Source of the DNA: Leucoraja ocellata
Taxonomy: Eukaryota
Length of the DNA: 62,669 nt
Direction of reading: 5' to 3'
NCBI GenBank assembly: GCA_036785375.1
Contig: JAWMAR010004017.1
Coordinates: forward strand, 1 to 62,669
Positions 4,692 through 58,209 of this stretch are shown here, piece after piece; the stretch's first letter is position 1, and every line of letters begins with the position of its first letter. The notes beneath the pieces were generated by a model. The model was not told the origin of the DNA and did no database searches. It was given only the letters and a program-made list of their open reading frames with translations. The position numbers and the translations under genes are program-made.

Positions 4692-5602
4692 CTATTGTTT
4701 GAATCGATTGCAAATTGCCTCGAAGGGACATTTGACCAGATTCTTCAACTGTTCTCTGAATTTAGCCTGAGTACCCGCATAAATGCACGTGTTGGTGCAT
4801 GAACTGAGAAGTTCCATCATGTAACCGCTTTCTTGCAGTATGAACATTGGGTTGGTGGAATTGGAATTGTTCGCATAATTTTTGATGAAAAATTGCACCA
4901 TTACAAAATTCACAACATTGGTCAATCGCAAGACCAGGAAGCTGCCCGAAATGGCGAATAGTATAATAATGGACTTTCTCCTGCTCTCCATCTCTGGGTC
5001 ATTCTGTTTATCTCCATGGCTCTGAGCTCGCAATCTCTTGCGGGCGCTGCTGGCCGCTAGAATGTGCCTGACCGTGAAAACATTGAGAAGCAAAATGAGC
5101 ACGAACGGTACGCATGGGTTTACCATGTAGAGTAGCCAGTCATATATCGTCCATGCAAGTGAAGTATAATAGACATCCTTTATGCTGCAGTACCAAGGTA
5201 TATTATCCAACACATACGCAGGTTCATATGTAAAAAAGAAAGGTACGTTTTTTACACAGTACAACACACACACCGTTCCGATGACGCCAGTCGCTATTTT
5301 CTCCGTGCAATATCGGACTTTCAGATGCGGGCAGCAAATGGCGATGAATCGATCGAAGGTGAACGCCACCGTTAACCAGGCGGAAGTGTCCTTGGAAAAC
5401 CAACTGAACGCAATAACGAGGCTGCAGCCGGGAGTGGTGGATAGCAAACTAACGGGGAAATAAAGAGCTCGCAGACGGCTTAATATCACTGCCGCCACGA
5501 TGACTAGGAAGTCCATCACCGCCATTGACAACAGATATCGGCTGATACATTTGGAGAGCCCGCATCTTCCCTGTGCTAGTATCACAGTCGTCATCAAATT
5601 AG
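4692..5602 (-). CDS. GPR139/GPR142-like class A GPCR, gene A, exon 2 (spliced product 326 aa)
   Basis: Acceptor ctccctctgtccacag|CT AAT TTG at 5602; seven hydrophobic segments, TM3 FTFDRF, TM5 NPCVPF, TM7 SSCTNTCIY; TAG at 4692-4694; AATAAA at 4655-4660 on the minus strand. Confidence 0.92.
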
Positions 5603-6249
5603 CTGTGGACAGAGGGAGACAGATTGTGAGTAGTGATAAAACGAATCTCTCAAGCCTCGTCACCCCCTAGTTTTCGGTCAGTATATGTGTATTTTCTTTA
5701 AGTATCCATTCAAGAACGTTCTATGTCAATGAAGTAAATTTACTTAACGTAAATAACTTAATTAAATTGTATTTAAGTATGTAAGTATTTTCTGGGGAAA
5801 GTATTCGTTAATGTGGCCCTTTTTCAATGGATACCTGTTTGCTGACGCGATCATGCAGCTACGTTAATAACTCAATGGAAACCTTTTTCCTTTGCATGTT
5901 TCGTTCATTTTAGACACGGATTTCTGGAATGACTAGGCGGGGCGGGCAGCGTCTCTGGAAAGATGGAATGGGTGATGTTTCGAGTCGAGACCCTTCTTCG
6001 GATTGCAAAGGCGAAACGGATATTGATCTGTGTTTTAGAAGGAACTACAGATGCTGGAAAATCGAAGGTAGACAAAAATGCTGGAGGAACTCAGCGGGTG
6101 CTGCAGCATCTATGGTGCGAAGGAAATAGGCAACGTTTCGAGCCGAAACTCTTCTTCAGTATTGATCTGATCGTTTTCAAGTGCCGAATTATGTTAAACA
6201 TAAAACTCGGGTAGTTGCAATATCTCATCAAGTGCGTGCCACAGTTTAT

Positions 6250-6545
6250 TTTAGAAACACAGCGGGCAATCAGAACCTTCGGCCCACGAAATCCGCGCCT
6301 TCCAGTGATCGCCGAGCAGCAGCAATATAGCACACATATGGGACAAGTTAACATTTTTGCCGAAGCCATCACACTAGAAACTTGTACAACCCACTTCGAA
6401 TGTGGGTGGAAGCCGGAGCTCCCGGAAAAAAACCCACGCAGTCACGGTAAAACCTACAAACACGGTACAGACTGCACCACGAGACAGGATCGAACCCGGG
6501 TCTCTGGCGCTGTAAGGCAGGAGGGCCAACGGCCCGCCGCGAAAA
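6250..6545 (-). mobile_element. tRNA-derived V-SINE (HE1-like)
   Basis: B-box CCCGGGTTCGATCC and V-domain-like CCGTGACTGCGTGGGTTTT; paralog at 34150-34480. Confidence 0.7.
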
Positions 6546-6560
6546 TAAGGTAATAGCTTT

Positions 6561-6633
6561 GAATGACCGGGATTTGCACCTGAACATGTATTGGATCTTA
6601 AAGCCAACGCCTTAACCACTCAGCCACCCTGCT
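6561..6633 (-). pseudogene. tRNA-Leu(TAA)-derived pseudogene or SINE head
   Basis: AGCAGGGTGGCTGAGTGGTTAAGGCGTTGGCTTTAAGATCCAAT matches the 5' half of vertebrate tRNA-Leu-TAA; T-arm degenerate (GTGCAAATC), variable arm shortened. Confidence 0.6.
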
Positions 6634-8587
6634 CTGCCGATTCACCATTTACCGCAGAACGGATGATTTACACTAACCTGTCAGGAAGTAAGGATACATG
6701 GGCAGAGGAAATACACTGGAAGACACGGGAAGGCTGGCATTAAACATAATCCAGACATTGTCGGGATGCGTTCGGGACAGAGTTAGATAGATTTCCTGGG
6801 GCTAATGGAATGGAGCAGTGTTGGTGGTGGTGGGGGGGGGGGGGGGGGGGGGGGGGGGTGGTGGCAGGAGCGGGGTACTGATTGTGGATGTTCAGCCATG
6901 ATCGCGGTCAGAGGCGGTGCTGGCTTGAAGGTCCGAATGGGCCCACTTCTGCACTTAATGTCTATTGTCGAATAACAATGTTCCAAGAAAAATGACTATA
7001 CTGAAATTCGCTTTAAAGGAAGGTACACACAAATGATGGACAAACTCAGCGGGCGCAGCAGCATCTATGGAGCGAAGGAAATAGGCTACACAAAAATACT
7101 CGAGAGGAACTCACAGAACGAGCAAGATAGAAGCGGATAACGTTTAAAGTGAAATCAACATAGTGCATATTTCCCCAATCGGATAGAAGTCCCAAACTAT
7201 CTGAAACATCAATGCAGCGGCTCACAGAGAGGCGGATGGTATCTGTGGATTTGTTAAGGACTGTCAGCGCCGGCAAATGCAAATGAACAGAGAGGGGTTC
7301 ACCCATTGTCCGTGGGTGTTTTAGGGAGGCATTCTGGAGTGATCCCATTGATTTTCAAAGTAGTCAACAGAAACATTTGAACATCTCAGTTAAACATTTC
7401 ATTGCAAAAGTGGGAATCCAGGCAGGACTGTTCGCGTCAAAGAACCAGTAACTTGGACCAACGCAATCGTTCATAATAAAATGCATGACGATTTAAAGCG
7501 ATGCAATCATTCCCAATCATAATCTGTTAACGAACCGAAATACAAATGTAAGTTTTCAAAGAGAACGCGTTCTGCTCATGAACTTCGAGCACAACCTGAA
7601 ATGAGCATTTGTGCTTTTCCTTTTTGCAGCATCCTTGAAATGTAACGTATAAACGATGTGAATAGTTTTATACATATACAACGTATATTGACAAATACAT
7701 TCTCATTCTGGTTGCTAATTGCGCGAAGTATGATTGATGAAATATAAACCAAGAAACAAACTGTGCATAGTAAACGTGGCCCTGAGAGCATCTACGGAGA
7801 GGGAAAAACGAAGCAGAGACATATATAAAGTTAATAACCGATTAAAACAACGTCTTCTTGCACAACGTTCGTTATAGAGACAGTATTGCTGTCATTTTAT
7901 AGTACAAAACGTTCATATTTTTATGCTGCTCACTCTTGGGCGTAGAATGAATCAGGAGGGTACTCGACAAATGAACAAAAACAAGAATATCATAATTTTA
8001 ATAATTATAATAAGATTACTTTATTAGCTTAGTATGTTTTGCAACATATGAGAAATTTGATTTGCCTTATATTGATACTAATAAAAAGCAACCGAACACA
8101 CGAAATACATTTTGACATAAACATCCACCACGGTGACTCCTCCACTTTCCTCACTGGTGAAAAATGTTCAATCTCAATCCCTTGTTTGTCCTCCACCTGT
8201 CGGGAGCCTCTGACATTCCGTTTACGGGACGATCTTGACTCTCGTGGCCGGCGGCGGGCCTGCTCGTCGGGGCGATCAAGCTCATGCATCGGGGGGTGTC
8301 AGCTCCCCGCGCCGGGCGATCTGACCGCGGGTCGGTGTTTGTCGAACGTCGTGTGGCTTTTGGAGCCACCGTTGTAGGTCTCAACCCCAGACCACGTGCT
8401 CCGGATGTTAAATCCATAGGCCGCGGTTGGAGCGTCGATCCAAGGCAAGGGATTGGCTCCGATGTCAAGTCGATGATCCGCGGTGGGGTTCAAAGTCAAT
8501 CCCGAGATTGGCCTCCAGCCCCACGATGTTTGGCCGCAGAGCAACCGGAGATACGACCCGGAAAATAATCGCATCTCCGGCAAGGTG

Positions 8588-9229
8588 ATAGAAACATAGA
8601 AACATAGAAAACAGGTGCAGGAGTAGGCCATTCGGCCCTTCGAGCCTGCGCCGCCATTCAATATGATCACGGCTGATCATCCAACTCAGTCTCCCGTACC
8701 CGCCTTCTCTCCGTACCCCCTGTCCCCCCTAGACACAAGGGCCACATCCAACTCCCTCTTAAATATAGCCAATGAACTGGCCTCAACTACATTCTGTGGC
8801 AGAGAGTTCCAGAGATTCACCACTCTATGTGTGAAAATGTTCTTCTGACCTCGGTCTTCAACGAATTTCCCCCTTATCCTTAAGTTGTGACCCCTTGTCC
8901 TGGACTTCCCCAACATCGAGAACAATCTTCCTGCATCTAGCCTGTCCAACCCCTTAAGAATTTTGTAAGTTTCTATAAGATCCCCCCTCAATCTCCTAAA
9001 TTATAGCGAGTATAAGCCGAGTCTATCCAGTCTTTCTTCATATGAAAGTTCTGACATCCCAGGAATCAGTCTGGTGAACCTTCTCTGCACTCCCTCTAAG
9101 GCAATAATGTCCTTCCTCAGATTTGGAGACCAAAACTGTACGCAATACTCCAGGTGTGGTCTCACCAAGACCCTGTACAACTGCAGTAGAACCTCCCTGC
9201 TCCTATACTCATATCCTTTTGCTATGAAA
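8588..9229 (-). mobile_element. CR1/HER1 LINE 3' end (in gene A intron)
   Basis: RPHLEYCVQFWSP...RGDLIETYK; CATAGAAA tail. Confidence 0.9.
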
Positions 9230-9519
9230 TGTAACAAACTGTTCCCCCGTGACCCCCTGCCCAACCCTAACATAAAACAAAGCAGGGAACATTAACAGAA
9301 ACGTTTTCACCATACTAAAATTAACAAGAAAAAAGACGAAAAGGACAGACGAAACTGCAGGCGAGGTTGACATCAAGGCACCATCCAGTGATAGTCATAT
9401 TATATTTATAATAGAATGTTATGAATATAATATGACATAATATGATATTGTGATATTCATATTATATTCATATTATGCATATGTATAAGATTAACCTTAC
9501 AAATAATAGCCAGTTGTAT

Positions 9520-10112
9520 TAGAACACCGAACAGGCAGGATTCAGGGCGCGATGTGAAAGTAAAAGAGCTTGTGTTCGNNNNNNNNNNNNNNNNNNNNNN
9601 NNNNNNNNNNNNNNNNNNNNNNNNNNNNNNNNNNNNNNNNNNNNNNNNNNNNNNNNNNNNNNNNNNNNNNNNNNNNNNNNNNNNNNNNNNNNNNNNNNNN
9701 NNNNNNNNNNNNNNNNNNNNNNNNNNNNCACTTTAAACAACTGCAGTTGCCACAAAAATGCTGTACATGAGAACTCGTGGACAAGAAGTTGTTACAAACC
9801 ATTAAAAACCGTAAAACAAAGGACTATAAAACAGTAAAAATTAAAATACATTAAAAGCACTAACAACAGGAGCAATGTCTCAGCCAGTGTCGAAAGCCGG
9901 AGAATAAAAATGAGTTGTTACGGTGGATTTGAAGATGGACAGTGAGGGGGCCTGTCTGATGTGCAACGGCAAGGTGTTCCAGAGTGCCGGAGCAGCAACA
10001 GAGAAGGCTCTATCCTCTCTGAGCTTCCGCTTAGACCTTGGTACCTCAAGGAGCAGCTGATCAGCTGACCTGAGGCACCGGGCAGGAGCGTATGGGTGGA
10101 GCAGCTCAGAGA
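9520..10112 (-). mobile_element. L2-clade LINE 3' end
   Basis: ELLHPYAPARCLRSADQLLL...DRAFSVAAPALWN on the minus strand. Confidence 0.7.
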
Positions 10113-10303
10113 TATGATAAGAAACATGATCAAGTGCATAGTTTTTAAGCGGACGCCGCAGCGATCAAATGGCGAGGATTTGAGGATATTACTTTCAATA
10201 TAATATACGGCGGCTGAAAAAGAAAGAACAAAAAGCAGAAAATGCAGACAACTACTCAAGCATAGCGGTATTAGTTGTTCACGCATTCAGCCGCGTAGTT
10301 TAC

Positions 10304-10373
10304 CTGGGACCCCGAAAACGGCAAGAGCAGTGTAATATACAGCAAAAACCGGGCCCTTTCCCGGCGCGTGCAT
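10304..10373 (-). CDS. GPCR gene A, exon 1 (MHAPGKGPVFAVYYTALAVFGVP)
   Basis: 70-bp ATG exon ending CCA G|gtaaac, phase 1, joins exon 2 in frame (70+911=981 nt); closely similar to exon 1 of gene C. Confidence 0.88.
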
Positions 10374-10755
10374 TTCCGTCAAACACAAAATGGGCATACG
10401 CTATATACAACAGTCAAGCTGCAGCCTAAAACATCATCGTTCTACTTATACCCGATGTGACTCCCTGGAGCATCAATCAGATTGCACCATCCTGCCGTTA
10501 GTGAATATTAAAGAAACACAATTTGCTGGGTTAATGGTTTGGCATCACATCTGGCGAATTGGGGAAGGCGGCGTTTCCGCTGGGATCATTCTTCTATTAA
10601 TTATTTTTTTCTGAAAAATAAACCACGTTATCTTAAGGTCCAAATTAATAGTTTAAAATGGTGATATCACCCTGTCTTCGGAATGAACATTTATCTCTGT
10701 TAATTGCACTTTATCAGTTTATTTATTCACGTGTGTATATATTTATATTATGGTA

Positions 10756-16235: not shown

Positions 16236-17750
16236 AGTAATGGTGCGACCACATGGTCTTCTATAGTTGAAGTAAATCATCCCTGGAACTTATGTAAATG
16301 AAGTAATACAACTGATAATCATTTTTTTTAAGGCAAGTTTTGCATCTTTGGCCAGTACTATCCAGTAGGATGGAGAAGGCTACAACTGATAAAGGGATAG
16401 ATTAGATTCAGATTAGATTCAATTTATTTGTCATTTGGACCCCTTAAGGTCCAAACGAAATGACGTTTCTGCAGCCATACATTACAACAAATAGACCCAA
16501 GACACAACATAATTTACATAAACATCCATCACATTGCTGTGATGGAAGGCAAAAAAAACGTATCTCTCCACTGCACTCCCCCCTCCCCCCTCCCCATGTC
16601 AGTCAAAGTCAAAGCCTCCGGCTGGCGATGGCGATTGTCCCGCGGCCATTAAAGCCACGCCGGGTGATGCAAAGTCGCACACCGGGTTCTTGATGTTAGA
16701 GCCCCCGGCGTGCGCTCGCAGAGTCCCGCGGCCATTCCAAGCCGCGCGGGGCGGTGATGTCAGGCCCCGCTCCAGGAGCTCTTCAACCCCGCAACTCGGG
16801 CGGGAGAAGTCGCCGTTGCGGGAGCCCTGAAAAGCGGTCTCCCTCCAGGGACCCGCGGGATGCCGGTGCCGCCGTCCGCCAGACCCGCAGTTGCAGCCTC
16901 CGAATCTCCGGAGGTCGGGCCGCAGCAGCGCTCCAACACCGCTCCACCCGCTCTGGACTCGGCCAGCTCCGCGACGGTGAGGTGAGTCGTCGGCACCAGA
17001 GCCCCCGGTCTTCTCCTGTTGGAGGCCGATCCTCGTTGCAGCCCCAGCGCCAACGGAGACCCGACAAAGAAAAGGTCGGGTCTCCCGTGCAGGGAGAGAT
17101 TTAAAAGTTACCCCCTCCCTCTCGCCCTCTCTATGTCTCTTTNNNNNNNNNNNNNNNNNNNNNNNNNNNNNNNNNNNNNNNNNNNNNNNNNNNNNNNNNN
17201 NNNNNNNNNNNNNNNNNNNNNNNNNNNNNNNNNNNNNNNNNNNNNNNNNNNNNNNNNNNNNNNNNNNNNNNNNNNNNNNNNNNNNNNNNNNNNNNNNNNN
17301 NNNNNNNNNNNNNNNNNNNNNNNNNNNNNNNNNNNNNNNNNNNNNNNNNNNNGTGAATCTCGTTCCCTTTCTGCTAAGTATATTTTGCAGTTGACTTCCG
17401 AAGCGAAGACGAGTAAGACAAAGATAACTACTTTCATATTCAATCAAACTGTTCACCCAGAACGTTCTCTATATATCTGCAATAATATAACCTGGCGACT
17501 GCTTCCGTTGATGAGAATGGAAATAACCCAATCTGAAACGTACGAAGTCCGCGGGAAAGAAAGACTAAGTGTAGTGTAATACAAAAAAAACATATACGGT
17601 TAAACGGGGTGCAAATAAAGCTAATAGCAATCCGTCTTCGAACTGTTAACCGCAAAAAGTTTCGTTTTCCCTCTCGTATTAAAATCTGCAGGACCTAGGC
17701 GTTTGCACCACGAGGTACTTGATCTGTTCACGCCCCTTGACAGCGATGTG

Positions 17751-19918: not shown

Positions 19919-19988
19919 ATGAGTGCGATTCTGGTAGAATGGATAAAACCCGTGTATTACCCATGTTTAGCATTGATTGGAGTCCCCG
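19919..19988 (+). CDS. GPCR gene B, exon 1 (MSAILVEWIKPVYYPCLALIGVP)
   Basis: 70-bp ATG exon ending CCC G|gtaagt; YYP..A.IGVP start of TM1 typical of this family; in frame with exon 2. Confidence 0.9.
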
Positions 19989-20274
19989 GTAAGTCACTGA
20001 TAAGTGCTTGGTGGAATGCACGCAAGGTGGAAATATGGGTCTGGAAACGGCGGCGTTTTCAAGAAAAAGGAAGATGGCAGGTTAACGCAGCAGGTTAATG
20101 CACATCGGGAGATAAAGTAATTGGTTTAAAGTGTTTACTTGCTAATATGGTAGCGATGCTTAGAGCATGTCATTCATCAATGTTCTGGATTGCGTACGTA
20201 TAATGTTGGTGGTAAATGGAACACGCCGGCACTATGATCCGAACTGATGGATTACATCCCTCAGCTGGAGCAGA

Positions 20275-22437: not shown

Positions 22438-23324
22438 TGAACCTGTTGGCCATTGTTGTCCTGTCGCGCGGAAAGTGTGGTCTCTCCAAGTGCATCACGA
22501 GGTATTTGGTGGCCATGGCGACAGCGGATCTCTCGGTGATCGTCTGCGAGGTGATATTGCATCAGATTACGGAGCTTTATTGGCGGAAGTCTTTCTTATC
22601 CTACACCGCTGTGTGCAGACTCATTCGCTTCCTCTCTCCGGCGGCCGTCGACTGTTCCGTTTGGTTCACGGTCGCTTTCACCTTTGATCGCTTTGTGGCC
22701 ATTTCCACTCAGACGATGAGAAACAAATATTGCACTGAGAGAACGGCGCTGGTGGTTATAGTGACCATCAGCGCGCTCTTCGGTTTAAAGAATATCCCCT
22801 GGCCTTTTATTTTCATTGGCTATAATGAGCGCATACAGCTGGGTTGCTTTATATCCACATATTTCTATACTGTCCCGGCATGGGTAGCATTTTCGTGGAC
22901 CGAACGGTTGCTAACCCCAGTTGTCCCATTCTGTGTTATTTTGTTCCTGAACGCGCTCATCGTCAGACGTATCGTCGTGGCCAGTCGTGTCCGCCGAAAT
23001 CTCCGGGACCTCGGTAGTAACGAGACGGAGATGGACCCAGAGACGGTGAACCGCAGACGGTCCATCGTTTTACTCCTTGCTATCACCATCACCTTTATAG
23101 TACTCTGGGCGACATCTGTGGTACATTTCATATACTATAACTTGGTGAAAGCCTTTGCACGCAGGACCTGGATCAGACCTTTTGTGGTGTTTGAAGATAT
23201 CAGCGTTATGGTTCACCTGCTGAGCTCCTGCACAAACACGGCCATTTACATGGTCACCCAGCGGCGGTTCAGGGGAGAGTTGCTGCACGCACTCAAATAT
23301 ATGCTTGCATTTATTCGGATATAG
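22438..23324 (+). CDS. GPR139/GPR142-like class A GPCR, gene B, exon 2 (spliced product 318 aa)
   Basis: Acceptor tttcttgttctcctag|TG AAC CTG; GKCGLSKCITRYLVAMA, FTFDRF, LWAT, SSCTNTAIY motifs; TAG 23322-23324. Confidence 0.92.
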
Positions 23325-31994: not shown

Positions 31995-32033
31995 CGTTTT
32001 TGTGTGGGGACCGCCGCGGTTTCTCTCAGTGTG
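31995..32033 (-). other. 23-RSS of V1
   Basis: CACACTG + 23 nt + ACAAAAACG. Confidence 0.9.
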
Positions 32034-32451
32034 CGTATATGTCGCGCAGTAATACACCGCCGTGTCGGCGGGTTCGATGCCCTCGATGATGAACTGGCCG
32101 CGCTTGTCAGCAGGTGTGAAATCTAATTTAAAACGACCATTCATCTCTCTCCCAGCCGCTCTTCGACTGATTAACCTTTCTAGTCGTTGTCCACGTTTCT
32201 GTCGGTACCACTGCATGGCATAAATGTATTTCTCGTAGGTACAATTGATCCGAGTCGACTCTCCATTCTGGACAATAATGGCGGGCGGAATCTGCCATAC
32301 CCCGTCCGAAAGACAACGACCTGAGGGAAATACATAAAATGCCGTCGCGTAAGATTGTATAAGTAAATATGCGACCGTGTATTATTTGTGAGCAGCTCTG
32401 GCACTTACGTATCAGCAACGCGAGGAAGATGGAAAATAGATTCTGCTGCAT
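32034..32451 (-). CDS. TCR alpha/delta V segment V1 (leader 32409-32451, V exon 32034-32320), apparently functional
   Basis: Leader MQQNLFSIFLALLI C|gtaagt; acceptor ttccctcag; DGVWQIPPAIIVQNGESTRINC...MQWYRQ...DTAVYYCATYT; followed by RSS. Confidence 0.9.
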
Positions 32452-35130: not shown

Positions 35131-35200
35131 ATGCACGCGCCTGGGAACGGCCCGGTCTTTGCAGTTTACTACTCCGCCCTTGCAGCGTTCGGTGTCCCAG
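35131..35200 (+). CDS. GPCR gene C, exon 1 (MHAPGNGPVFAVYYSALAAFGVP)
   Basis: 70-bp ATG exon ending CCA G|gtaacg, phase 1, in frame with exon 2. Confidence 0.9.
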
Positions 35201-37741: not shown

Positions 37742-38709
37742 CGAATGCGTTGACCATTGTGATCCTGGCGCAAGGAAGATGCGGCCTCGCCAAGTGTATC
37801 ACCCGCTACCTCGTGTTCATGGCGGTGGCGGATCTCCTCGTCATTATCACGGCAGTGATACTGAGTCGGCTACGTGCTATTTATTTCCCTGTCAGTTTTT
37901 TGTCCACCATTCCCGCCTGCAAACTTATTATTCTCCTCAGCTGGGCATCCAAGGACACGTCAGTTTGGTTGACCGTCGCCTTCACCTTCGATCGATTCAT
38001 CGCCATTTGCTGTCACCGACGCAAGCTCAGATATTGCACGGAGAAAAACGCGGCTGCCGTTATTGGAGCTGTCTGTGCGGCGGGTTGTTTAAAGAACGTC
38101 CCTTCTTATTTCATATACGTGCCAGTGTACGTGGTCGATAACGTGCCCTGGTTCTGCACGATAAACCAAATGTACTACTCTTCCATTGCATGGAGGGTTT
38201 ATGACTGGCTGCACCGGATGTTAAACCCATGTGTCCCTTTCCTTCTCATTTTTCTACTCAATGTTCTGACCATCAGATACATCCTAAAGGCGAATGAAGC
38301 CCGCAAGAGGCTCCGTGCCCAGAGCAATGGAGACAGACAGAATGACACGGAGATGGAGAACAGGAGGAAGTCTATCATTTTACTCATGGCGATATCGGGT
38401 AGTTTTCTCCTGTTGCGATTGACGTATGTCGTGAATTTTCTATTTGTGCAATTGACCAGCAATAACTATGCCAGCGGCTCCAATTCCGCTGATCCAAAGT
38501 TTATCCTACAGGAAAGCGGATACATGCTGGAGCTTCTCAGTTCTTGCACCAACTCGTGCATTTACGCGGGGACTCAGATTAAGTTCAGAAGACAGTTGAA
38601 GGGCGTTGTTCAATTCCCATTCAAACTAATTAAAACATGGTTCAAAACTTACGCATTACCGATAGTTTCTGTCTTATTTCCACCACTGAAAATTATAAAG
38701 TTGATATGA
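37742..38709 (+). CDS. GPR139/GPR142-like class A GPCR, gene C, exon 2 (spliced product 345 aa)
   Basis: Acceptor ctctctcacacag|CG AAT GCG; FTFDRF, NPCVPF, SSCTNSCIY; roughly 70% identical to gene A by eye. Confidence 0.92.
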
Positions 38710-38879
38710 TTTTGAAATAGGTGAGTGTCAGTGATGTCTAGTTTCTGTCCTTATCAGCCTCAAGTCAAGTCAAGTCAAGTCAAGTCAAGTGTATTTGTCA
38801 CATACACATGCAAGATGTGCAAGTTCTCTTTGAGTCGCTGCGCAGGAAAAAAACATAGTTAAGACCAATGTTTGACCCT

Positions 38880-45021: not shown

Positions 45022-45060
45022 AGTTTTCGTACTGGTATGACGCTGCTTTCCATCGCTGTG
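45022..45060 (-). other. 23-RSS of V2
   Basis: CACAGCG + 23 nt + ACGAAAACT. Confidence 0.85.
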
Positions 45061-45367
45061 CCTTCGAAAGCGCAGTAATACAGGGCAGAGTCGGTCAATA
45101 GCAACCCGGTGATCATTAAATTATTCCACTTGGTCTTGGTGTCCAGCTCCGAAAAGAAACGTGTCCCGAATCCTTCGCCTCTCTCTTGTCCCTCCCAAGA
45201 CTTCTGCCGCGCAATAAACACAGGTTCATTCCCCGCTTGTTTTCTGTACCAGTACAACGAATAGGTGCTTTCTGTAGTGATGTAGCTGCATGAAAGCATC
45301 ACCCCTTCGCCTTCTCTACTTTTTTTTGATGATTGCGGCTGACGTACCGAATTTCCTGAACTCCGAC
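45061..45367 (-). CDS. TCR alpha/delta V segment V2 (V exon; leader uncertain, around 45614-45660)
   Basis: Acceptor ggtcatag|GT; NSVRQPQSSKKSREGEGVMLSC...YWYRKQ...DSALYYCAFEG; open frame; RSS follows. Confidence 0.88.
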
Positions 45368-48293: not shown

Positions 48294-48772
48294 ATGAACA
48301 GTCGTCTCGCGCCGTTCTTTATCGTTATGTCGCTTCTAGGTAAGAATTTCCTTTCCACTAAAATGGAACACCTCGCTGTATCTCTGTGATCCAATATGTC
48401 GACAGGCGGGGTACTGATTAGTAGTTTAACTAAGATAAAGATGGCATCTGATCTATTGTTTCTCTTAGACAGGAGCCTCCAGGACACGGTGGAACAATCG
48501 GTCTCTGAAACGAATTGCACGGAGAAAAGTAAAGTCACACTAAGTTGTGAGTTGAAAACCACGGATACGAACCCTTATGTTTTCTGGTACAAGCAGATCC
48601 TCATGCGGCCTCCGCACTACCTTCTTCGTATTATCGCAGGGCAGCTAACCAGAAATAGCGGCATCGCCGACCGGTTTTCCTCCACTTACGATAAATTGAC
48701 GAAAATTACAGAGTTAACAATCGATGACGCCGTGATCTCCGACTCGGCCGTGTATATCTGTGCCATGAGCCC
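48294..48772 (+). CDS. TCR alpha/delta V segment V3 (leader 48294-48339, V exon 48469-48772), apparently functional
   Basis: Leader MNSRLAPFFIVMSLL G|gtaag; acceptor ttctcttag; DTVEQ...VTLSC...FWYKQ...DSAVYICAMSP; RSS follows. Confidence 0.9.
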
Positions 48773-48811
48773 CACACTGCTGCAGAGATAGAGAAAACAC
48801 GAACAAAAACT
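48773..48811 (+). other. 23-RSS of V3
   Basis: CACACTG + 23 nt + ACAAAAACT. Confidence 0.9.
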
Positions 48812-49015
48812 CCCTCCGGAGAAATACCCTTAATGTCCACCAGAAGGCGATCAGACAAGCACGAAAACTGAANNNNNNNNNNNNNNNNNNNNNNNNNNNN
48901 NNNNNNNNNNNNNNNNNNNNNNNNNNNNNNNNNNNNNNNNNNNNNNNNNNNNNNNNNNNNNNNNNNNNNNNNNNNNNNNNNNNNNNNNNNNNNNNNNNNN
49001 NNNNNNNNNNNNNNN

Positions 49016-49162: not shown

Positions 49163-50072
49163 NNNNNNNNNNNNNNNNNNNNNNNNNNNNNNNNNNNNNN
49201 NNNNNNNNNNNNNNNNNNNNNNNNNNNNNNNNNNNNNNNNNNNNNNNNNNNNNNNNNNNNNNNNNNNNNNNNNNNNNNNNNNNNNNNNNNNNNNNNNNNN
49301 NNNNNNNNNNNNNNNNNNNNNNNNNNNNNNNNNNNNNNNNNNNNNNNNNNNNNNNNNNNNNNNNNNNNNNNNNNNNNNNNNNNNNNNNNNNNNNNNNNNN
49401 NNNNNNNNNNNNNNNNNNNNNNNNNNNNNNNNNNNNNNNNNNNNNNNNNNNNNNNNNNNNNNNNNNNNNNNNNNNNNNNNNNNNNNNNNNNNNNNNNNNN
49501 NNNNNNNNNNNNNNNNNNNNNNNNNNNNNNNNNNNNNNNNNNNNNNNNNNNNNNNNNNNNNNNNNNNNNNNNNNNNNNNNNNNNNNNNNNNNNNNNNNNN
49601 NNNNNNNNNNNNNNNNNNNNNNNNNNNNNNNNNAGTTCGCGAGCAGTGCTTATGTCATCCAGTGATACACTGTGATAACAGGCACTTCGGCCCAACTTGC
49701 CCATACCGGCAAACATGTCCCTGCGACATTAGGCCCACCTGCCAGCTTTGGTCCAAATCCCTCCCAACCTGTCCTATCCTTGTTCCTATGCTTGAAATTG
49801 AAATTATATTTATTCACACCAGATAGGATCGCACGATCCATTTTCCAGATTTGGACTAGCAGTCTCACTTTATGTAGAAAATTCCCTTCCTTGGTCCGCT
49901 ACGCAGAACGCATAATTATCATCGTGTCTGATTATTGGACCATCTACATTTGCTCACCAGCTCTTCAAAATATCCGGAAACGTTAGGGACGTACGTCCGT
50001 CGCTTTATTCAGTTGCGATGTCAGTAAATTGGTCCAATGATCTACTTCATCATGTGTGACTGGAGATAATAG

Positions 50073-51501: not shown

Positions 51502-51728
51502 TAGGACTGCATGGCAACGAAATTTTCGTTCAGACCGAAATGTCTGAATGACAATAAAGGCTACTGTGACTTTGACTTTGAATTCAGGACTCTGTGTGCA
51601 TTGTTTCAAGTCGAGACGATGCGGTTTCCGCTAGCATTCTATGCGCTCAGTAATTGCATTCTACCGTTAGTGCCGCATCAGCGGTTGGAAGTTGCCCGCA
51701 ACCTACACACCTGTGCCCCAGAAAAAAC

Positions 51729-51766
51729 AATTATTGTACGAGGATTAGCTCGCACCTATCACTGTG
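51729..51766 (-). other. 22-bp-spacer RSS of V4
   Basis: CACAGTG + 22 nt + ACAATAATT (divergent nonamer). Confidence 0.8.
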
Positions 51767-53488
51767 AGCCGTTGCTGCAGTAATATACCGCTACATCAGA
51801 CAACCGTGGCCCAGGAATGGTTAGTCGATACTCTCTCGCTGTGTTATCCATCACATCAACAAAGCGGCGTTTAGCGAATTCCGCTTGAAAGTGATACTTG
51901 CCGCCAGGGTCTCTCCACACGACGAACTCTGGCCTTCTGCCTGGGTACTGACGGTACCAGTATAAATAATAGGCTTCACTGGTATAGGTGCAAATAAAAG
52001 TGACATGATCGCCCTCCAACCGCTGGACGGCGGGCTCTCGTTGTGTCACGGAATCGGCATAGCTGAGATCTGGGACACGAAATAAGAACATTAGTCGGAA
52101 CTTTGAATACAATCCTCATCGGCGGAAAGAAAATGCAACTTAGTTCATTGTAGTGCAGAGATAGCATATTGGCTATCCCACGAGTATATCTGATACGGAG
52201 ATCCATTGAATCAAACAACGCACACACACACACAACCACTTCGATCGAGCTGTCCAATCGTAGCCACACCTTTTAAACATAGAAACATAGACAATAGTGC
52301 AGGAGTAGGCCATTCGGCCCTTCGAGCCAGCACCACCATTCAATATGAGCATGGCCTGATCAACCACAATCAGTACCCGTGCCAGCTTTCTCCTCATATC
52401 CCCTGATTCAGTCAGACCAAAGAGCTAAATCTAACTTTCTCACGAAAAAATCCTCTGACTGGGCTCCACTGCATTCTGTGGCAGAGAATTCCACAGATTC
52501 AGAACTTTCTGAATGAAAAAGATTTTCTTCATCTCAGTCCTAAGTGGCCGACCCCTTATTCTTAAATATTTTATCCACGTTTGCCTCATACCCCTCTTAA
52601 AGGTGTCTGTTCGTTGCCAGTTCAAAATTATTTTGAATGCTGTTATTTCATAAGGGCATCAGGTCATAAGTGATGGGAACACAATTGGGCCATTCTGTCC
52701 ATCAAGTGTACTCCGCCATTCGATCATGGTCGATCTATCTCCTCCCTCCTAACCCATTTCCCTGCATTCCCCCCATAACCTCTGACACCCCGATTCAACT
52801 CTCAGTTTCACCTACATCCTTTGGTAACTCGGTCCAAATACACACCGCCCGCTTTGGAAGAAGTGGCCACTTATGGCCCTATAAATCTTACCGCTCCCGC
52901 TTTAAACCTACGCTCGGAATCTTCATTTTCCTGCAACTCTCAATGCCCCTCCTAATTTACACACCTCCGGCTATTACCACTCAATGTCTGCGCTCCACGA
53001 ATACAATTGTCGCCTGCCTAAATTATCCCTGTAGCTCTGCCTCCCGATTCGTGGCAATATCGTCGCAAATGATATCTGCATGTTTTGCAGCCGACTGGCA
53101 TATTTTTAATTCGACTGCAGATGAAGAAGTTTCGCCACAAATCGCGCAGTTTATCGTGGATCAACTGGTATATTGCTCCATTGCATTTGCTGCCAATACC
53201 ACACAGGTGAATCCGTTGTCTTCATCTCCATGCAATCGACACTTTCTTTTTGTGATCGGTGCTTACGGCCTTCATACCCCACGGGAAAACCACTCATCCC
53301 AACAGATCCGACCAGTGGTCAGACAACCCAGGGGTTTTCGATATATCTGTGTCTTTCATCTGAATCTCCGTGACCGTGAAATTGGTCAACTCTCCAGACC
53401 CCAGAACGTTAGTTATATTGGGGAAAAACATAACAGCCTTACCGACGATGAACCTCATCCACAGTGCAGCGAGTACAAAGACTCCCAT
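51767..53488 (-). CDS. TCR alpha/delta V segment V4 (leader 53443-53488, V exon 51767-52069; 1.37-kb TE-containing intron)
   Basis: Leader MGVFVLAALWMRFIV G|gtaag; acceptor gtgtcccag; ADSVTQREPAVQRLEGDHVTFIC...YWYRQYPG...DVAVYYCSNG; RSS follows. Confidence 0.87.
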
Positions 53489-53705: not shown

Positions 53706-54446
53706 TGGACCAATAGACATTTTTTTGCAAGCTTTAGAACCAATAGACATTTTTTTGCAAGCATTGTAGAACCAAAAGAGGCACTTTTTGCAAACATTGT
53801 AGAACCAAAAAAGACACATTCTGCAAGCATTGTAGAACCAAAAAGAGACACTTTTTGCAAACATTTTAGAACCAATAGACACCTTTTGCAAGCATTTAGA
53901 CCAATATACACTTTTTACAAGCATTTAGAGCCAATGGACATTTTTTGCAAGCTTTAGAACCAATAGACATTTTTTGCAAGCATTTTAGAACATATAGACT
54001 TTTTTTGCAAGTATTTTAGAACCAAAAAGACACATTCTGCAAGCATTATAGAACGAAAAGAGATACTTTTTGCAAACATTTTATAACCGATAGACCCTTT
54101 TTGCAAGCATTTTGGAAACAATAGACACTTTTTGCAAGCTTTAGAACCAATATACATTTTTTGCAAGCATTTTGGAACCAATAGTCATTTTTACAAGCTT
54201 TCGAACCATTAGACATGTTTTTGCAAACATTAGAACCAATATACATTTTACATGCATTTTAGAACCAATAGTCACTTTTTACAAGCTTTAGAACCAATAG
54301 ACATTTTTTTGCAAGCTTTAGAACCAATAGACATTTTTTGCAAGCTTTAGAACCAATAGACATTTTTTGCAAGCTTTAAAACCAATAGACACTTTTTGCA
54401 AACATTTTAGAACCAATGGACACTTTTTGCAAGCATTTAAGAACCA
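53706..54446. repeat. Minisatellite, ~30-33-bp unit AGAACCAATAGACATTTTTTGCAAGCTTT
   Basis: More than 20 visible degenerate copies. Confidence 0.9.
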
Positions 54447-55844
54447 CTAAGGGCACTCACATTTGAGTAGACATGTGGTCAGTGTTATTCACAGTTCAGA
54501 GAAACGTAACCCTCTGCCTTCCTCCATCTTGAAGAGTGAGTGAGGCACATCACTGCCTCGTTTTATAGTCCCTCTGCTGCCAGCGGGGGCAGCAGAGAGA
54601 ATGGGGAATTTTGTAAAAACATTAATATCTCTGTCATTGTTCATCGACGGGAAAGATCCTCGGCACACATGCGGCGGAGGGGTGCTCTGAGCAAGGTGGC
54701 CAAAATGACGGCCGTAGGTGGCGGCGTTTTCTCGGAAATCGCAGCACAGACGGCCGAAAGCAGTCAAGAACAGAGATTTAGTAATATACTAGACCAAGTG
54801 CAGACTCTGCTCCCCCAATGTTGTGATCCCCAACCCAATATTCCACCATGCACCCGTCTCCTCCAATGGAACTGAAGCCGTTCTCAAAAGTAAGATTCCA
54901 GCACTGCCCTGCCTCCCTCAGCAGTGGATTAAAAAACAATCCAATGGCACCTACCCTGCCTGCTGCAGCAGTTAAAAGTTCAGAGTGTTCCTGTCTTGCA
55001 ACTTTGTTTCGAAGTGCGTTGGAAGCTGACATGTAAATGGAGAAGCCAGTTTATTCTTGAAATACTTGGGGGTGGGGGCGAGTAGGATTTGATTGAAAAC
55101 GTGTACTTCAGCACGACGAAATGTAATGAGGGGCGGATACTTAGAAAGAAAAGCGAAATCTCTACCGAAATGGAAAAGATCTCGGAGATTGAGCGTCTGG
55201 ATTGGGCGTGGCAATGAATCAAAGGAAGAAATGCAGCCGGCAGCCGTACATGCAAATGGATCCATTCCGATTGGACATCTGCGAGCATCGGCCATTCCGA
55301 TTGGACATCTGCGAGTTTCGGGCACGAATCAAAAGGGCACGAATCAAAAGGCAGAAAGGGATCCGGACGGCAGCCGGANNNNNNNNNNNNNNNNNNNNNN
55401 NNNNNNNNNNNNNNNNNNNNNNNNNNNNNNNNNNNNNNNNNNNNNNNNNNNNNNNNNNNNNNNNNNNNNNNNNNNNNNNNNNNNNNNNNNNNNNNNNNNN
55501 NNNNNNNNNNNNNNNNNNNNNNNNNNNNNNNNNNNNNNNNNNNNNNNNNNNNNNNNNNNNNNNNNNNNNNNNNNNNNNNNNNNNNNNNNNNNGGGTCCCA
55601 TGTTCACACGGGAGGGCTGGCCTCCCAATGCAATATTCCACCTCTTCACCAATTAAAATATTGGTAGCCAGTGGGGGGGGGGGGGGGGGGCTTTCTGGAG
55701 GGCTAGTATTGGTATTGTGGGCTGAAGGGACTGATTGCAAGAGGGCTAGTATGGACATTGTTGGCCAAATGGATTCTTAGGGTGACAGCTCAGTCACTCA
55801 AGCCTGATATGCTGGCAGCTCACTCACGGCTGGAGTGCGAGCAG

Positions 55845-56380
55845 TTTCAAGCACGGTTCATGGCTACCAAATTCAATTGCAGTTTCATACCACTTCAAGC
55901 AGGGTACAAGGCTACCACATTCAGGTGCAGTTTCACACCACTTCAAGCAGGGTGCAGGGCCACCGAATTCAAGTGCAGTTTCCGACCACTTCAAGCAGGG
56001 TGCAAGGCCACCAAATTCAAGTACAGTTTCATACCACTTTAAGCAGGGTGCAGGGCCATGTAACTCAAGTTCAGTTTCCTACCATTTCAAGTAGGGTGCA
56101 GGGCCACCAAACTCAAGTGCAGTTTCCTACCACTAAGCAGGGTGCAGGGCCACCAAACTCAAGTGCAGTTTCATGCCACTTCAAGCAGGTTGCAAGGCCA
56201 ACACATGCAAGTGCTGTTTAATGCCATGTCAAGCAGGGTGCAAGGCAACCAAATTCACGTGCAGTTTCATACCACTTCAAGCAGGGTGCAAGACAACTAA
56301 ATTGAAGTGCAGTTTCATACCATTTCAAGTAGGGTGCAAGGCCAAAACATTCAAATGCAGTTTCATACCATTTCAAGCGG
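55845..56380. repeat. Minisatellite, ~48-bp unit CAAGCAGGGTGCAAGGCCACCAAATTCAAGTGCAGTTTCATACCACTT
   Basis: About 11 degenerate copies. Confidence 0.88.
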
Positions 56381-57636
56381 GATGAAACCACCATAAAACC
56401 ACCATAAAACACTACACTCACAGTTCAGTAGATATTCAGTGTGTTCAGTTGATTCACACCTCAGACAGAGTAGTGACCTCTCCCTCCCCCAACGTGCAGA
56501 GACTGAGCCACGCCCATACTTCCAGGTTTTATTATCCCACCCCCTCCCAAAGGAAAGGGTGTGGCTTTCATGGCGTGATTGACAGGAGAGAGATTCTCAA
56601 CATTTTTTTAAACTCTAAAAACACCTTTATTTTTAATTGATGGGAAGAATCCTCTGCACCTGATATGCAGGGTACTGAGTAAGATGGCCAAAAATCACAG
56701 CCGTAATTGGTAGCGTTTAATCTAAAATCAATATACATTGCAAACAGGAAGTTGTCAAGTTACCACCACCAACAACCACTGCAGTGCAGCATTTCAAAGC
56801 AGTTACCACCACCAACAACCATTTGCAGTGCAACATTTCAAAGCAGTTGCCACCACCAACCATTTGCAGTGCAGCATTTCAAAGCAACCACATTTTCATT
56901 TTCAAATCACATTAAGGGCACTCACAGTTGAATGGACACGTGTTAAGTGTTATTCACAGCTCAGAGAGACGTGACCCTCTCACTTCCTCAATCTTGCAGA
57001 GACTGAGTGAGGGACATCACTTCCGGGTTTTATAGTCCCTCCCCCCTCCCACCAGCAGGGGCGGCAGAGAGAATGTCAACATTTAAAAAATATTAATAAC
57101 TCTTTTATTTTTCATCAATGGGAAAAAAATCGTCGTGTACTACGCAGCGGAGCGGGACTCTGAGTAAGATGGATAGAAATCACAGCCGTAAGTGGCATCG
57201 TTTTTTCAAAAATCACGAAACAGGAAAACAGCAAGTGGTCAAGATCTTACTTTTAGTAATATAGATAGATACGGAAAACAGCAAATAGTTGTTTTGGAGT
57301 GTTGAACGTTGAGAGGGGACCATGTGACTTACCTTCACCTCACAATTTAGTCCTAAGGAAAGGCCTAGAGCTTCAGTAGTTTTATATGTCGAATCATTTC
57401 ATTGTTCGGAGTCGCAACCAATTATATTTTCAGATATGATCAAATTATTGCGAGCGGATTGGATAAATGCAAGCGGCCTTAATTTTGATTGGATGGATGG
57501 AAGCTGCAAGCTGATTGGATGCTTCATTCAAAGCCAGCAGCGACGCAATAATCAGCGAGGCCGGATATCGCATAATATCTTCACTGCAAACAATTTCAGA
57601 GTCAGTCCTCTTTGTTCAGGACGGTCGCCGGCCGAC

Positions 57637-58170
57637 ATGTTCGCAGTTCTTGCTCATTTGTTTTATTTCGCTGTAGCTCTTTTCACAAGTAAGCTCGCAA
57701 AGTATACGGTTTCCCTTATCACGTGTCGCTGATATCGAAAATCTCCCGCCGGCTACTTCGACTTTGATCTATCTCAGTTGAATATGTCCAACCTCTCCTC
57801 GCGAATATTGGGCTGTATTAATTTAAAATACAAAAATGTTGATGTGTTTTTAAATTATTGCAGGTGTCGTTGCCATAGACTCAGTCTCACAGGAACCGTC
57901 TAACTTGACGCCGGTGGAAGGAGACTCGGCGAAAATTAACTGCAGGTATTCAACTACGGCTGATATGTATTCTTTGCATCTGTACCGTCAGAAACCGAAC
58001 AGTGGCTTCACCTTCCTGATTCTCATCCCATCCTTCGGAAACATTTCCAGGGCACAAATTGTGGGTCCTCGAATTTCCGCGTCCCTCGACACTTCGAGAG
58101 GCGAAAGTTCATTCACCCTGGCTGGAGTGGAGCTGTCTGACGGAGCCGTATATTACTGCGTGCTGAGAGA
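57637..58170 (+). CDS. TCR alpha/delta V segment V5 (leader 57637-57688, V exon 57864-58170); conserved Trp replaced by Leu
   Basis: Leader MFAVLAHLFYFAVALFT A|gtaag; acceptor ttattgcag; DSVSQEPSNLTPVEGDSAKINC...LHLYRQKP...DGAVYYCVLR; RSS follows. Confidence 0.88.
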
Positions 58171-58209
58171 CACGGTGCCACTATCCATGAGCGGCCTCGT
58201 ACAAAAACT
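58171..58209 (+). other. 23-RSS of V5
   Basis: CACGGTG + 23 nt + ACAAAAACT. Confidence 0.9.

What the first reader, a model, noticed from the sequence alone, without database searches (positions are those of the whole stretch)
4692..58209. Intact GPR139-like GPCR multigene family interleaved with RAG-rearranging TCR alpha/delta V segments
Seen: the order is GPCR-A(-), probable V relic(-), GPCR-B(+), V1(-), GPCR-C(+), V2(-), V3(+), V4(-), V5(+), so at least GPCR-C sits between two RSS-bearing V genes; all three GPCRs are open with canonical splice sites despite dense TE insertion. Known: mammalian GPR139 and GPR142 are single-copy receptors activated by aromatic amino acids (Trp, Phe), and the mammalian TRA/TRD V region is flanked by olfactory GPCR genes. 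Inference: an expanded, diversifying GPCR family co-evolves inside the antigen-receptor locus. V-to-(D)J joining could delete or invert these genes clonally, giving T cells a rearrangement-dependent GPCR complement, or the TCR enhancer could drive the GPCR next to the rearranged V.
Basis: partly seen in the sequence, partly recalled or inferred. Interest (0 to 1): 0.82.

Follow-up and report, generated by a model that had tools for sequence, protein, structure and literature searches.

The report
Orphan GPCR genes among skate TCR V segments
In a skate genome, three intact genes of a large shark-and-ray-specific family of orphan receptors lie scattered among T-cell-receptor V gene segments, much as a few smell-receptor genes do in mammals, but nothing yet shows that the receptors work in T cells.

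Summary
The window holds three intact two-exon class-A GPCR genes (A, B, C) and five V-set exons, each ending in an RSS with a 22/23-bp spacer. The "V relic" between A and B was not found. No N gap touches a coding exon. V1 and all of GPCR-C share one gap-free contig. The intron of GPCR-A contains a gap, and every other adjacency rests on scaffolding.

The GPCRs are 99% identical to little-skate proteins annotated "probable GPR139". They belong to an elasmobranch-wide expansion (1738 hits; 101 clusters at 50% identity). GPR139 is their closest solved relative, but only distantly. A and C diverged long ago under purifying selection (dN/dS about 0.2). Variation is concentrated in the outer half of the receptor.

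The V segments resemble TCR alpha/delta V genes. V4 looks VH-like and V5 lacks Trp41.

T-cell function, enhancer capture and cross-species synteny are therefore untested.

The likeliest reading is passive co-residence in a duplication-prone V array, like OR genes among mammalian TRAV genes. The scan's first readers noted the same interleaving on many other pieces of this genome (24 unchecked notes).

The parts
10304..10373 (-). GPCR-A coding exon 1 (70 nt, ATG at 10373, GT donor at 10303-10302). It encodes the family's consensus N-terminus.
   Evidence: tblastn with the N-termini of five full-length homologs, E 1e-9 to 1e-11; sequence and donor read.
4692..5602 (-). GPCR-A coding exon 2 (AG acceptor, phase 1, includes the stop). 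With exon 1 the model is 326 aa. The intron 5603-10303 holds the N gap 9579-9728.
   Evidence: ORF; Pfam 7tm_1 58.1 bits; 300/303 identical to L. erinacea XP_055522164.1; 96.8% to A. radiata P0001.
19919..19988 (+). GPCR-B coding exon 1 (70 nt, donor GTAAGT).
   Evidence: Weak tblastn hit, E 0.15-0.5; ATG, reading frame, donor and phase read. This is the least certain exon.
22438..23324 (+). GPCR-B coding exon 2. The model is 318 aa and the whole gene lies inside the gap-free contig 17353-26748.
   Evidence: ORF; 7tm_1 67.6 bits; 41% identical to A and C; best representative P0241 (Heptranchias perlo 'probable GPR139') at 64%.
35131..35200 (+). GPCR-C coding exon 1 (70 nt, GT donor at 35201).
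   Evidence: tblastn E 4e-11 to 6e-13. Contigs of a related species cover 34912-35548 at about 94%.
37742..38709 (+). GPCR-C coding exon 2. The model is 345 aa, on the same gap-free contig as V1.
   Evidence: ORF; 7tm_1 64.1 bits; 99.0% identical to L. erinacea P0008 / XP_055522165.1; 280/283 to A. radiata P0403.
31995..32320 (-). V1: V exon (about 32034-32320) plus RSS (CACACTG, 23-bp spacer, ACAAAAACG at 31995-32033). A candidate leader ATG lies near 32451-32463. V1 is head-to-head with GPCR-C, about 2.7 kb from its ATG.
   Evidence: V-set 46.8 bits; PDB single-V best hits are TCR alpha at about 53 bits; Atlas first hit 'TVA11'.
45022..45367 (-). V2: V exon plus RSS (CACAGCG, 23-bp spacer, ACGAAAACT).
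   Evidence: V-set; PDB best hits are human Vdelta1 and many TCR alpha chains.
48469..48811 (+). V3: V exon plus RSS (CACACTG, 23-bp spacer, ACAAAAACT). An N gap starts 61 bp further on.
   Evidence: PDB best hits are TRA and Vdelta1 chains.
51728..52069 (-). V4: VH-like V exon plus RSS (CACAGTG, 22/23-bp spacer, weak nonamer). No convincing leader; TE debris lies about 220-290 nt upstream.
   Evidence: all of the best 60 PDB hits are antibody chains, e.g. 65 bits in one stretch to a heavy chain.
57864..58209 (+). V5: V exon plus RSS (CACGGTG, 23-bp spacer, ACAAAAACT). Leu replaces the invariant Trp41 (codon about 57980-57982), so it may be non-functional.
   Evidence: PDB hits are a mix of VH and TRAV.
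9579..9728 (.). One of seven N gaps, this one inside GPCR-A's intron. The others are 17143-17352, 26749-27109, 41966-42106, 48873-49015, 49163-49633 and 55379-55592. All lie outside exons and RSSs.

Best explanation
The window is a piece of the T-cell-receptor alpha/delta V-gene array of a skate. By protein identity the species is a Leucoraja or a very close relative.

Three intact members of a GPCR family are embedded between the V segments. The family is an elasmobranch-wide expansion of a 'GPR139-like' orphan class-A clade. That clade survives as a few copies in coelacanth, salamanders and some ray-finned fishes and is only distantly related to true GPR139.

Shown: the gene structures, their integrity, purifying selection, the size and taxonomic spread of the family, the V/RSS anatomy, and the physical contiguity of V1 and GPCR-C.

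Inferred: the two families share the region because both grow by tandem duplication and gene loss in the same duplication-prone stretch. The GPCRs probably use their own compact promoters, seen as a TATA box about 60 nt upstream of the ATG in A and C, and probably act outside T cells, most plausibly as a ligand-diversified sensory or neural repertoire. V(D)J joining then deletes or inverts them in T cells as a by-product without consequence. The same would hold for the OR genes among mammalian TRAV genes and, as I recall, for the trypsinogen genes in the TRB locus.
For: GPCR identity and integrity: Pfam 7tm_1 for 3 of 3 genes. All three have an identical two-exon, 70-nt, phase-1 structure. A and C are 99% identical to annotated L. 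erinacea proteins. dN/dS between A and C is 0.19-0.25 at dS 0.8-1.0.

Family: 1738 hits with E<=1e-3. Of the best 120, 117 carry names, all from 18 elasmobranch species. There are 101 clusters at 50% identity with E<=1e-30. The nearest relatives outside elasmobranchs are 'probable GPR139' proteins of Latimeria, salamanders and a teleost at 28-30% identity. The coelacanth protein is itself only 70 bits from human GPR139. The family profile scores 79.5 bits against GPR139 and 60 bits against the next receptor.

Ligand-side diversification: mean column entropy is 1.31 bits in the outer half against 0.80 bits in the inner half, Mann-Whitney p=1.8e-9.

V identity: V-set for 5 of 5 and an RSS at 5 of 5. 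Among the listed hits to the V profile, 11 are named TCR alpha or alpha/delta and 1 is named TCR beta. PDB best hits for V2 and V3 are TCR alpha and Vdelta1.

Contiguity: V1 and GPCR-C lie on one gap-free contig. Contigs from two samples of the same species match its unique parts without a single difference. The orthologs of A and C sit on one 208,102-bp L. erinacea scaffold with consecutive accessions, and on one A. radiata chromosome.

Old duplication rather than a recent cassette: the A and C regions share only their exons and TE pieces.

Precedent: OR genes are interspersed among the 5' TRAV genes in human, mouse and sheep (PMC4574546, passages).
Against: No expression data of any kind were obtained. 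No listed holder of GPCR-C is on record as RNA, and the possible RNA run that was laid touched only repeats. 'Acts outside T cells' is therefore an analogy, not a result.

Greater variability on the outer side is common to GPCR families in general and does not by itself indicate chemosensation.

The unchecked first-reader notes report interleaving on many pieces of this genome. If that is true, it is denser than any mammalian precedent and might mean more than chance co-residence.

The order across six of the seven gaps rests on scaffolding.
Confidence: 0.6

Rival explanations
1. Functional coupling to the antigen-receptor locus. The GPCRs are expressed in T cells. V(D)J deletion or inversion, or the TCR enhancers, give each clone its own GPCR complement or switch on the GPCR next to the rearranged V.
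For: The geometry allows it. V1 and GPCR-C are head-to-head about 2.7 kb apart on one contig. The Vs point both ways, so both deletion and inversion would occur. The genes are intact and under purifying selection. Unchecked notes report the same interleaving on many pieces of this genome.
Against: There is no RNA evidence at all. A and C carry their own TATA-type promoter region directly upstream of exon 1. OR genes among mammalian TRAV genes are deleted in T cells without any known role (PMC4574546). Other first-reader notes describe pure GPCR arrays without V segments (unchecked). Homologs lie on at least four different large contigs in Heterodontus francisci, so the family is not tied to one locus.
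Confidence: 0.05
2. The V segments are orphons. RSS-bearing V genes were scattered into a GPCR array away from the working TRA/TRD locus and are never, or rarely, rearranged.
For: The window holds no J or C gene. V5 lacks Trp41. V4 has a weak nonamer and no clear leader. The L. erinacea orthologs of A and C lie on an unplaced 208-kb scaffold.
Against: Five V genes from five different families, with 24-33% identity to V2 and 29-34% in pairwise tblastn, within 27 kb looks like a normal V array. Three of the five (V1-V3) have an open V exon, Cys23, Trp41, Cys104, a plausible leader and a good RSS. The A. radiata orthologs are on a 59.9-Mb chromosome. Other notes place NAR-TCR cassettes, a TCR-delta feature, among the same GPCRs (unchecked).
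Confidence: 0.15
3. Assembly artefact. Contigs from a GPCR array and from a V array were wrongly scaffolded together, or collapsed at shared LINE copies.
For: There are seven gaps in 62.7 kb and LINE debris at 21 places. Short-read contigs break at every repeat and none spans the 6-kb stretch that was tested.
Against: V1 and the whole of GPCR-C are on one gap-free contig. Its unique segments are matched with no differences by contigs from two samples. A and C orthologs share one scaffold in the L. erinacea RefSeq assembly. Many other pieces of this genome are reported to have the same pattern (unchecked).
Confidence: 0.05

Closest known systems
Olfactory-receptor genes interspersed among the 5'-most TRAV genes of mammals (human OR10G2 and OR4E2; mouse Olfr1507-1509; sheep)
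   Same: Class-A GPCR genes of a multigene family lie between RSS-bearing TRA/TRD V genes and would be removed by V-J joining (PMC4574546, passages read).
   Different: In mammals there are two or three OR genes, all at the 5' edge of the locus. Here the receptors belong to a different GPCR family (Pfam 7tm_1, nearest GPR139). Three lie in 34 kb, with one placed between V genes of both orientations. Unchecked notes report the same on many more pieces of the genome.
Trypsinogen genes embedded in the TCR beta locus
   Same: An unrelated multigene family is conserved inside a TCR locus and is expressed in another tissue.
   Different: The locus and the gene family both differ. This comparison rests on recall alone.
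GPR139 / GPR142 (mammalian orphan receptors for aromatic amino acids)
   Same: GPR139 is the closest solved relative: 33-40 bits for single sequences and 79.5 bits for the family profile, against 60 bits for the next receptor. NCBI names the skate and shark homologs 'probable GPR139'.
   Different: The skate genes are not orthologs of GPR139. Identity is low, and the family is closer to a coelacanth, salamander and teleost 'GPR139-like' group (107 bits to GPCR-B), which is itself only 70 bits from GPR139. Elasmobranchs have roughly a hundred clusters at 50% identity, whereas mammals are said to have single copies.
'GPR210A/B', orphan clade placed next to GPR139/142 in coelacanth, gar and fishes (PMC6504862, passage read)
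   Same: This is probably the same non-mammalian GPR139-like lineage as the outgroup hits.
   Different: That survey covered no cartilaginous fish (0 occurrences of 'shark' or 'Callorhinchus'), so the expansion is not in it. I did not test whether the proteins are the same as that clade.
Lineage-specific chemosensory GPCR repertoires (OR, TAAR, lamprey TARL)
   Same: A large tandem family of compact genes, gain and loss of copies across species, and variability concentrated on the ligand side.
   Different: There is no evidence of expression in sensory neurons. The catshark olfactory survey read here mentions neither this family nor GPR139.

Membership tests
Class A (rhodopsin-like) GPCR | Match to Pfam 7tm_1 above the gathering score | tested here: met
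   A 58.1, B 67.6 and C 64.1 bits against a cut-off of 30.5.
Class A (rhodopsin-like) GPCR | Seven transmembrane helices plus helix 8 | tested here: met
   The AlphaFold2 model of the full-length A. radiata homolog P0006 has pLDDT 86.7, pTM 0.84, 7 TM helices and H8. This was shown on a homolog, because the window's joined exons were not folded.
GPR139/GPR142 subfamily | GPR139 or GPR142 is the nearest characterised receptor | tested here: met
   GPR139 is the best PDB hit for A, for B and for the family profile: 32.9, 40.5 and 79.5 bits, with the next receptor at 60 bits.
GPR139/GPR142 subfamily | Orthology to GPR139, that is high identity and single copy | tested here: not met
   Single sequences reach only 33-40 bits. 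The family is closer to a coelacanth and salamander paralog group. There are 101 clusters at 50% identity with E<=1e-30.
GPR139/GPR142 subfamily | Activation by aromatic amino acids | not testable with these tools
   This needs a receptor assay.
TCR alpha/delta V gene segment | V-set Ig domain with Cys23, Trp41 and Cys104 | tested here: met
   V-set for 5 of 5. The two Cys residues are invariant. Trp41 is present in 4 of 5; V5 has Leu.
TCR alpha/delta V gene segment | RSS (heptamer, 23-bp spacer, nonamer) directly 3' of the V exon | tested here: met
   5 of 5. The heptamer matches at 6-7 of 7. The nonamer matches at 7-8 of 9 in four Vs and 6 of 9 in V4. Other TCR V, IGHV and IGLV genes are also said to carry a 23-bp spacer (recalled), so this feature is not specific to alpha/delta.
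TCR alpha/delta V gene segment | Split leader exon upstream | tested here: inconclusive
   V1, V2, V3 and V5 have hydrophobic ATG-started candidates with an AG acceptor at the V exon. V4 has none that convinces. There is no transcript to confirm any of them.
TCR alpha/delta V gene segment | Closest named relatives are TRAV or TRDV rather than TRBV, TRGV or Ig | tested here: inconclusive
   Among hits to the V profile, 11 are named alpha or alpha/delta and 1 is named beta. V2 and V3 best match TCR alpha and Vdelta1. For V1, Atlas gives 'TVA11' first, with beta, gamma and IGH clusters close behind. V4 is VH-like and V5 is mixed.
TCR alpha/delta V gene segment | Linkage to TRDD, TRDJ, TRDC, TRAJ and TRAC | not testable with these tools
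Chemosensory receptor repertoire | Large lineage-specific expansion with ligand-side variability | tested here: met
   These features are necessary but not sufficient.
Chemosensory receptor repertoire | Expression in sensory neurons | not testable with these tools
   No RNA run holds the gene.

The most novel reading that the evidence does not exclude
The embedding is functional. Because each T-cell clone deletes or inverts a different stretch of the V array, it keeps a different subset of these GPCR genes, or brings a different one under the TCR enhancers. V(D)J recombination would then set a clonal GPCR complement alongside the antigen receptor.

A less radical reading that the data also allow, at about 0.25-0.3, is that this family is the undescribed main chemosensory repertoire of sharks and rays, whose known olfactory receptor families are tiny. 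On that reading, a GPCR array beside TCR alpha is an ancient neighbourhood echoed by the mammalian OR genes around TRAV1.
Probability: 0.04. Interest if true: 0.95.

Novelty: new variant of a known kind. Interest (0 to 1): 0.58.

Why it matters
Two fields meet here.

For comparative immunology, a cartilaginous-fish TRA/TRD V array threaded with intact genes of another multigene family shows that GPCR genes among TRAV genes are not a mammalian oddity. It offers a natural test of whether genes inside a rearranging locus are shielded from, or exploited by, V(D)J recombination and the TCR enhancers.

For sensory biology, sharks and rays have very few OR, TAAR and V1R genes. The catshark figures read are 2 OR, 6 OR-like, 3 ORA, 3 TAAR and 2 TARL. 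A family of roughly a hundred 50%-identity clusters of intact, ligand-side-variable orphan receptors found only in elasmobranchs is an obvious candidate repertoire. My searches and three genome or sensory papers do not mention it. The genes are already in RefSeq as 'probable GPR139', so the question can be answered with existing assemblies and tissue RNA-seq.

Tried and rejected
I dropped it.

Other genes: five further long ORFs had no Pfam match (0 of 5). The LINE-tail ORF and a 236-aa ORF also had none.

J or C genes: RSS-12-like hits at 16530, 46459 and 49674 have no J-like coding sequence beside them in the ORF lists. I rejected them.

Recent V+GPCR cassette duplication: rejected for this window, because A and C share only their exons and TE pieces.

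Shared V1/GPCR-C promoter: unlikely, because 2.7 kb with LINE debris lies between them.

A V2 search returned one unnamed hit. The V-profile search returned no elasmobranch RefSeq V proteins, so chromosome-level co-location could not be read from contig lengths.

Expression: the look-up of sequencing runs listed no holder on record as RNA. In read laying, the guessed RNA run X6 lay only on repeats.

B does not. This is too weak to build on.

Papers: the search for 'GPR139-like' found 0 papers. The search for 'GPR139' plus 'shark' found 4 papers, judged irrelevant from the listing. The five-term TCR/GPCR/shark search found 0. Table S1 of PMC12227049 (coordinates of the antigen-receptor complex) and the supplementary datasets of PMC11979771 could list these genes, and I could not see them.

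Full report
WHAT IS IN THE WINDOW. The 62,669-bp window has 45% G+C and seven runs of N. Three long ORFs, at 4692-5663(-), 22323-23324(+) and 37750-38709(+), match Pfam 7tm_1 at 58-68 bits against a cut-off of 30.5.

Full-length homologs start with a conserved N-terminus of about 23 residues that these ORFs lack. tblastn with that N-terminus found it at 10373-10304(-) and at 35131-35200(+), with E from 1e-9 to 6e-13. It found a weak match at about 19952-19987(+). Reading the DNA gives three gene models of the same build. Each has a 70-nt first coding exon from the ATG, a GT donor, an intron of 2.4-4.7 kb, an AG acceptor and a phase-1 junction inside TM1. The models are:
- A(-): 10373-10304 + 5602-4692, 326 aa.
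- B(+): 19919-19988 + 22438-23324, 318 aa.
- C(+): 35131-35200 + 37742-38709, 345 aa.

A and C are 70% identical in protein, and B is 41% identical to either.

THE V SEGMENTS. Five V-set exons pass Pfam's cut-off (5 of 5): V1(-) about 32034-32320, V2(-) 45061-45367, V3(+) 48469-48772, V4(-) 51767-52069 and V5(+) 57864-58170. Each is followed at once by a heptamer, a 22/23-bp spacer and a nonamer. The scan found 17 RSS-like sites, against a mean of 5.75 in 20 simple shuffles, and five of them sit exactly at V ends.

The Vs are 24-33% identical to V2 in the alignment and 29-34% in pairwise tblastn, so they represent five different families. V1 to V3 look functional: an open exon, Cys23, Trp41, Cys104, a plausible leader and a good RSS. 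V4 has a 6-of-9 nonamer and no convincing leader. V5 has Leu in place of Trp41.

The next hit after the five Vs had E=5.4. The window holds no J or C gene and no other Pfam-recognisable gene.

Fragments of one LINE family lie at 21 places (RVT_1). Minisatellites lie between V4 and V5.

THE GAPS. No gap touches a coding exon or an RSS. B lies wholly in the contig 17353-26748. V1 and the whole of C lie in the contig 27110-41965. A V gene next to an intact GPCR gene is therefore not a scaffolding product. A's two exons are on different contigs, because the gap 9579-9728 is in its intron, and the rest of the order depends on the scaffold joins.

Independent support comes from several sources. Short-read contigs from two samples of the same species match every unique part of 31950-37949 with no differences, although none bridges the repeats. 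A related species, at 94-96% identity, has the unique intergenic block 33423-34137, exon 1 and the start of exon 2 of C. The little-skate proteins that are 99% identical to A (XP_055522164.1, 300/303) and to C (XP_055522165.1) lie on one 208,102-bp scaffold with consecutive accessions. The thorny-skate orthologs lie on one 59.9-Mb chromosome.

WHAT THE GPCRS ARE. The search with A returned 1738 proteins with E<=1e-3. Of the best 120, 117 carry names, and all of those come from 18 shark, ray and skate species. Nearly all are called 'probable GPR139', and 44 are from Heterodontus francisci alone, spread over at least four large contigs.

An exhaustive HMMER search with B against 50%-identity representatives gave 101 clusters at E<=1e-30, and then a drop to full-length proteins of 28-30% identity. 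Those are 'probable GPR139' proteins of coelacanth, three salamanders and a teleost. The coelacanth protein is itself only 70 bits from human GPR139, so it is a paralog lineage and not GPR139.

Against the PDB, GPR139 is the best hit for A (33 bits), for B (40 bits) and for a 31-sequence family profile (79.5 bits, with neurotensin receptor 1 next at 60 bits). A 2019 survey places an orphan clade, 'GPR210A/B', from coelacanth, gar and fishes next to GPR139/142. It covered no cartilaginous fish (PMC6504862, passage).

I therefore file these genes as an elasmobranch expansion of a GPR139-like lineage, not as GPR139.

They are maintained by selection. dN/dS between A and C is 0.19-0.25 at dS 0.8-1.0. 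A groups with a thorny-skate and then a sawfish protein, and C groups with little-skate paralogs.

I used the AlphaFold2 model of a full-length homolog (pLDDT 86.7) to split the helices into halves. Outer halves and loops are more variable than inner ones: 1.31 against 0.80 bits, p=1.8e-9, across 116 sequences. Before this count I had dropped 7 of the 120 homologs for length. This pattern fits ligand-side diversification, but it is common among GPCR families.

WHAT THE V SEGMENTS ARE. Among the listed hits to a profile of the five Vs, 11 are named TCR alpha or 'alpha/delta variable', 1 is named beta, and the rest have generic names. In the PDB, V2 and V3 best match human Vdelta1 and TCR alpha chains. 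V1 matches TCR alpha and some antibody constructs, and its first Atlas cluster is 'TVA11'. V5 is mixed. All of V4's best 60 hits are antibody chains, which recalls the Ig-like V segments (TAILV) used by shark TCR delta (the term was seen in PMC12227049). Five unlike V families within 27 kb, with no J or C beside them, fits a TCR V array. It does not fit the V-(D)-J-C clusters in which, as I recall, shark Ig genes are organised. Linkage to J and C genes could not be tested.

HOW IT MOST LIKELY WORKS. Nothing in this window ties the two families together beyond position. There is no repeated V+GPCR unit. A and C have their own TATA-type promoter region about 60 nt before the ATG. No RNA evidence exists: no listed holder of C is on record as RNA, and the one possible RNA run that was laid touched only repeats.

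Mammals offer a direct precedent. OR genes sit between TRAV1 and TRAV2 in human, mouse and sheep (PMC4574546, passages). The trypsinogen genes in TRB are a second precedent, which I recall but did not read.

The best-supported reading (0.6) is passive co-residence of two tandemly duplicating families. On that reading, V(D)J joining deletes or inverts the GPCRs in T cells as a side effect. The Vs being orphons (0.15) and misassembly (0.05) remain possible.

NOVELTY. The genes themselves are annotated in RefSeq. What I could not find in print is the expansion or its position in a TCR locus. In addition, term searches inside the antigen-receptor-complex paper, the catshark sensory paper, the little-skate genome paper and a stingray genome paper found no GPCR passage on this family or its place in a TCR locus. 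The stingray paper does report an expansion of TRAV/TRDV genes.

The scan's first readers noted the same interleaving on many other pieces of this genome (24 notes mention GPR139). Those notes are unchecked and I use them only as leads.

Noticed in passing
51767-52069 (-): V4 resembles antibody VH domains more than TCR V domains. All of its best 60 PDB hits are antibody chains, and its FR3 is VH-like. It may be an Ig-like V of the kind that shark TCR delta uses (TAILV or VH-delta type). Its nonamer is weak and no leader was found.
   Followed up: partly
57980-57982 (+): V5 has Leu (TTG) where the invariant Trp41 of V domains should be. The rest of the exon and the RSS are intact. This could be a recent pseudogene, a polymorphism or a sequencing error.
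   Followed up: partly
10443-10537 (-) and about 35040-35075 (+): The regions upstream of GPCR-A and GPCR-C share a GGGA-containing palindrome-like site, which matches the recalled O/E (EBF) consensus at 8-9 of 10 positions, 11-13 bp before a TATA box and about 60 nt before the ATG. GPCR-B lacks it.
   Followed up: partly
GPCR-A and GPCR-C exon 2, in TM6; also P0001-P0003: A, C and their closest orthologs have Arg where B and most family members have the TM6 Trp (…LLWLT… against …LLRLT…). I recall that position as the class-A 'toggle' Trp. The family also has DRF in place of DRY and N-x-x-x-Y without the Pro in TM7.
   Followed up: no
55379-55592: A seventh N run lies inside the finding's span but is missing from the program's list of gaps.
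   Followed up: yes
53709-54446, 55846-56378, 56758-56886: Minisatellite arrays lie between V4 and V5 (29/88-bp, 48-bp and 44-bp units). They produce long spurious ORFs.
   Followed up: no
38650-38709 (+): GPCR-C's reading frame runs about 19 codons past the point where A ends, giving a longer C-terminal tail.
   Followed up: no
P0401 (L. erinacea XP_055522164.1) against window 10304-10373: The RefSeq model of A's ortholog starts with a different 42-residue N-terminus from the family-consensus exon 1 found in the window. Either an alternative 5' exon exists or the automatic model is wrong.
   Followed up: no
P0121 (Logan contig, 1338 bp): A public contig encodes a V that is 94% identical to V2 and reads on through the same post-RSS sequence. 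It is therefore a germline copy in a relative, or a paralog, and not a rearranged transcript.
   Followed up: no
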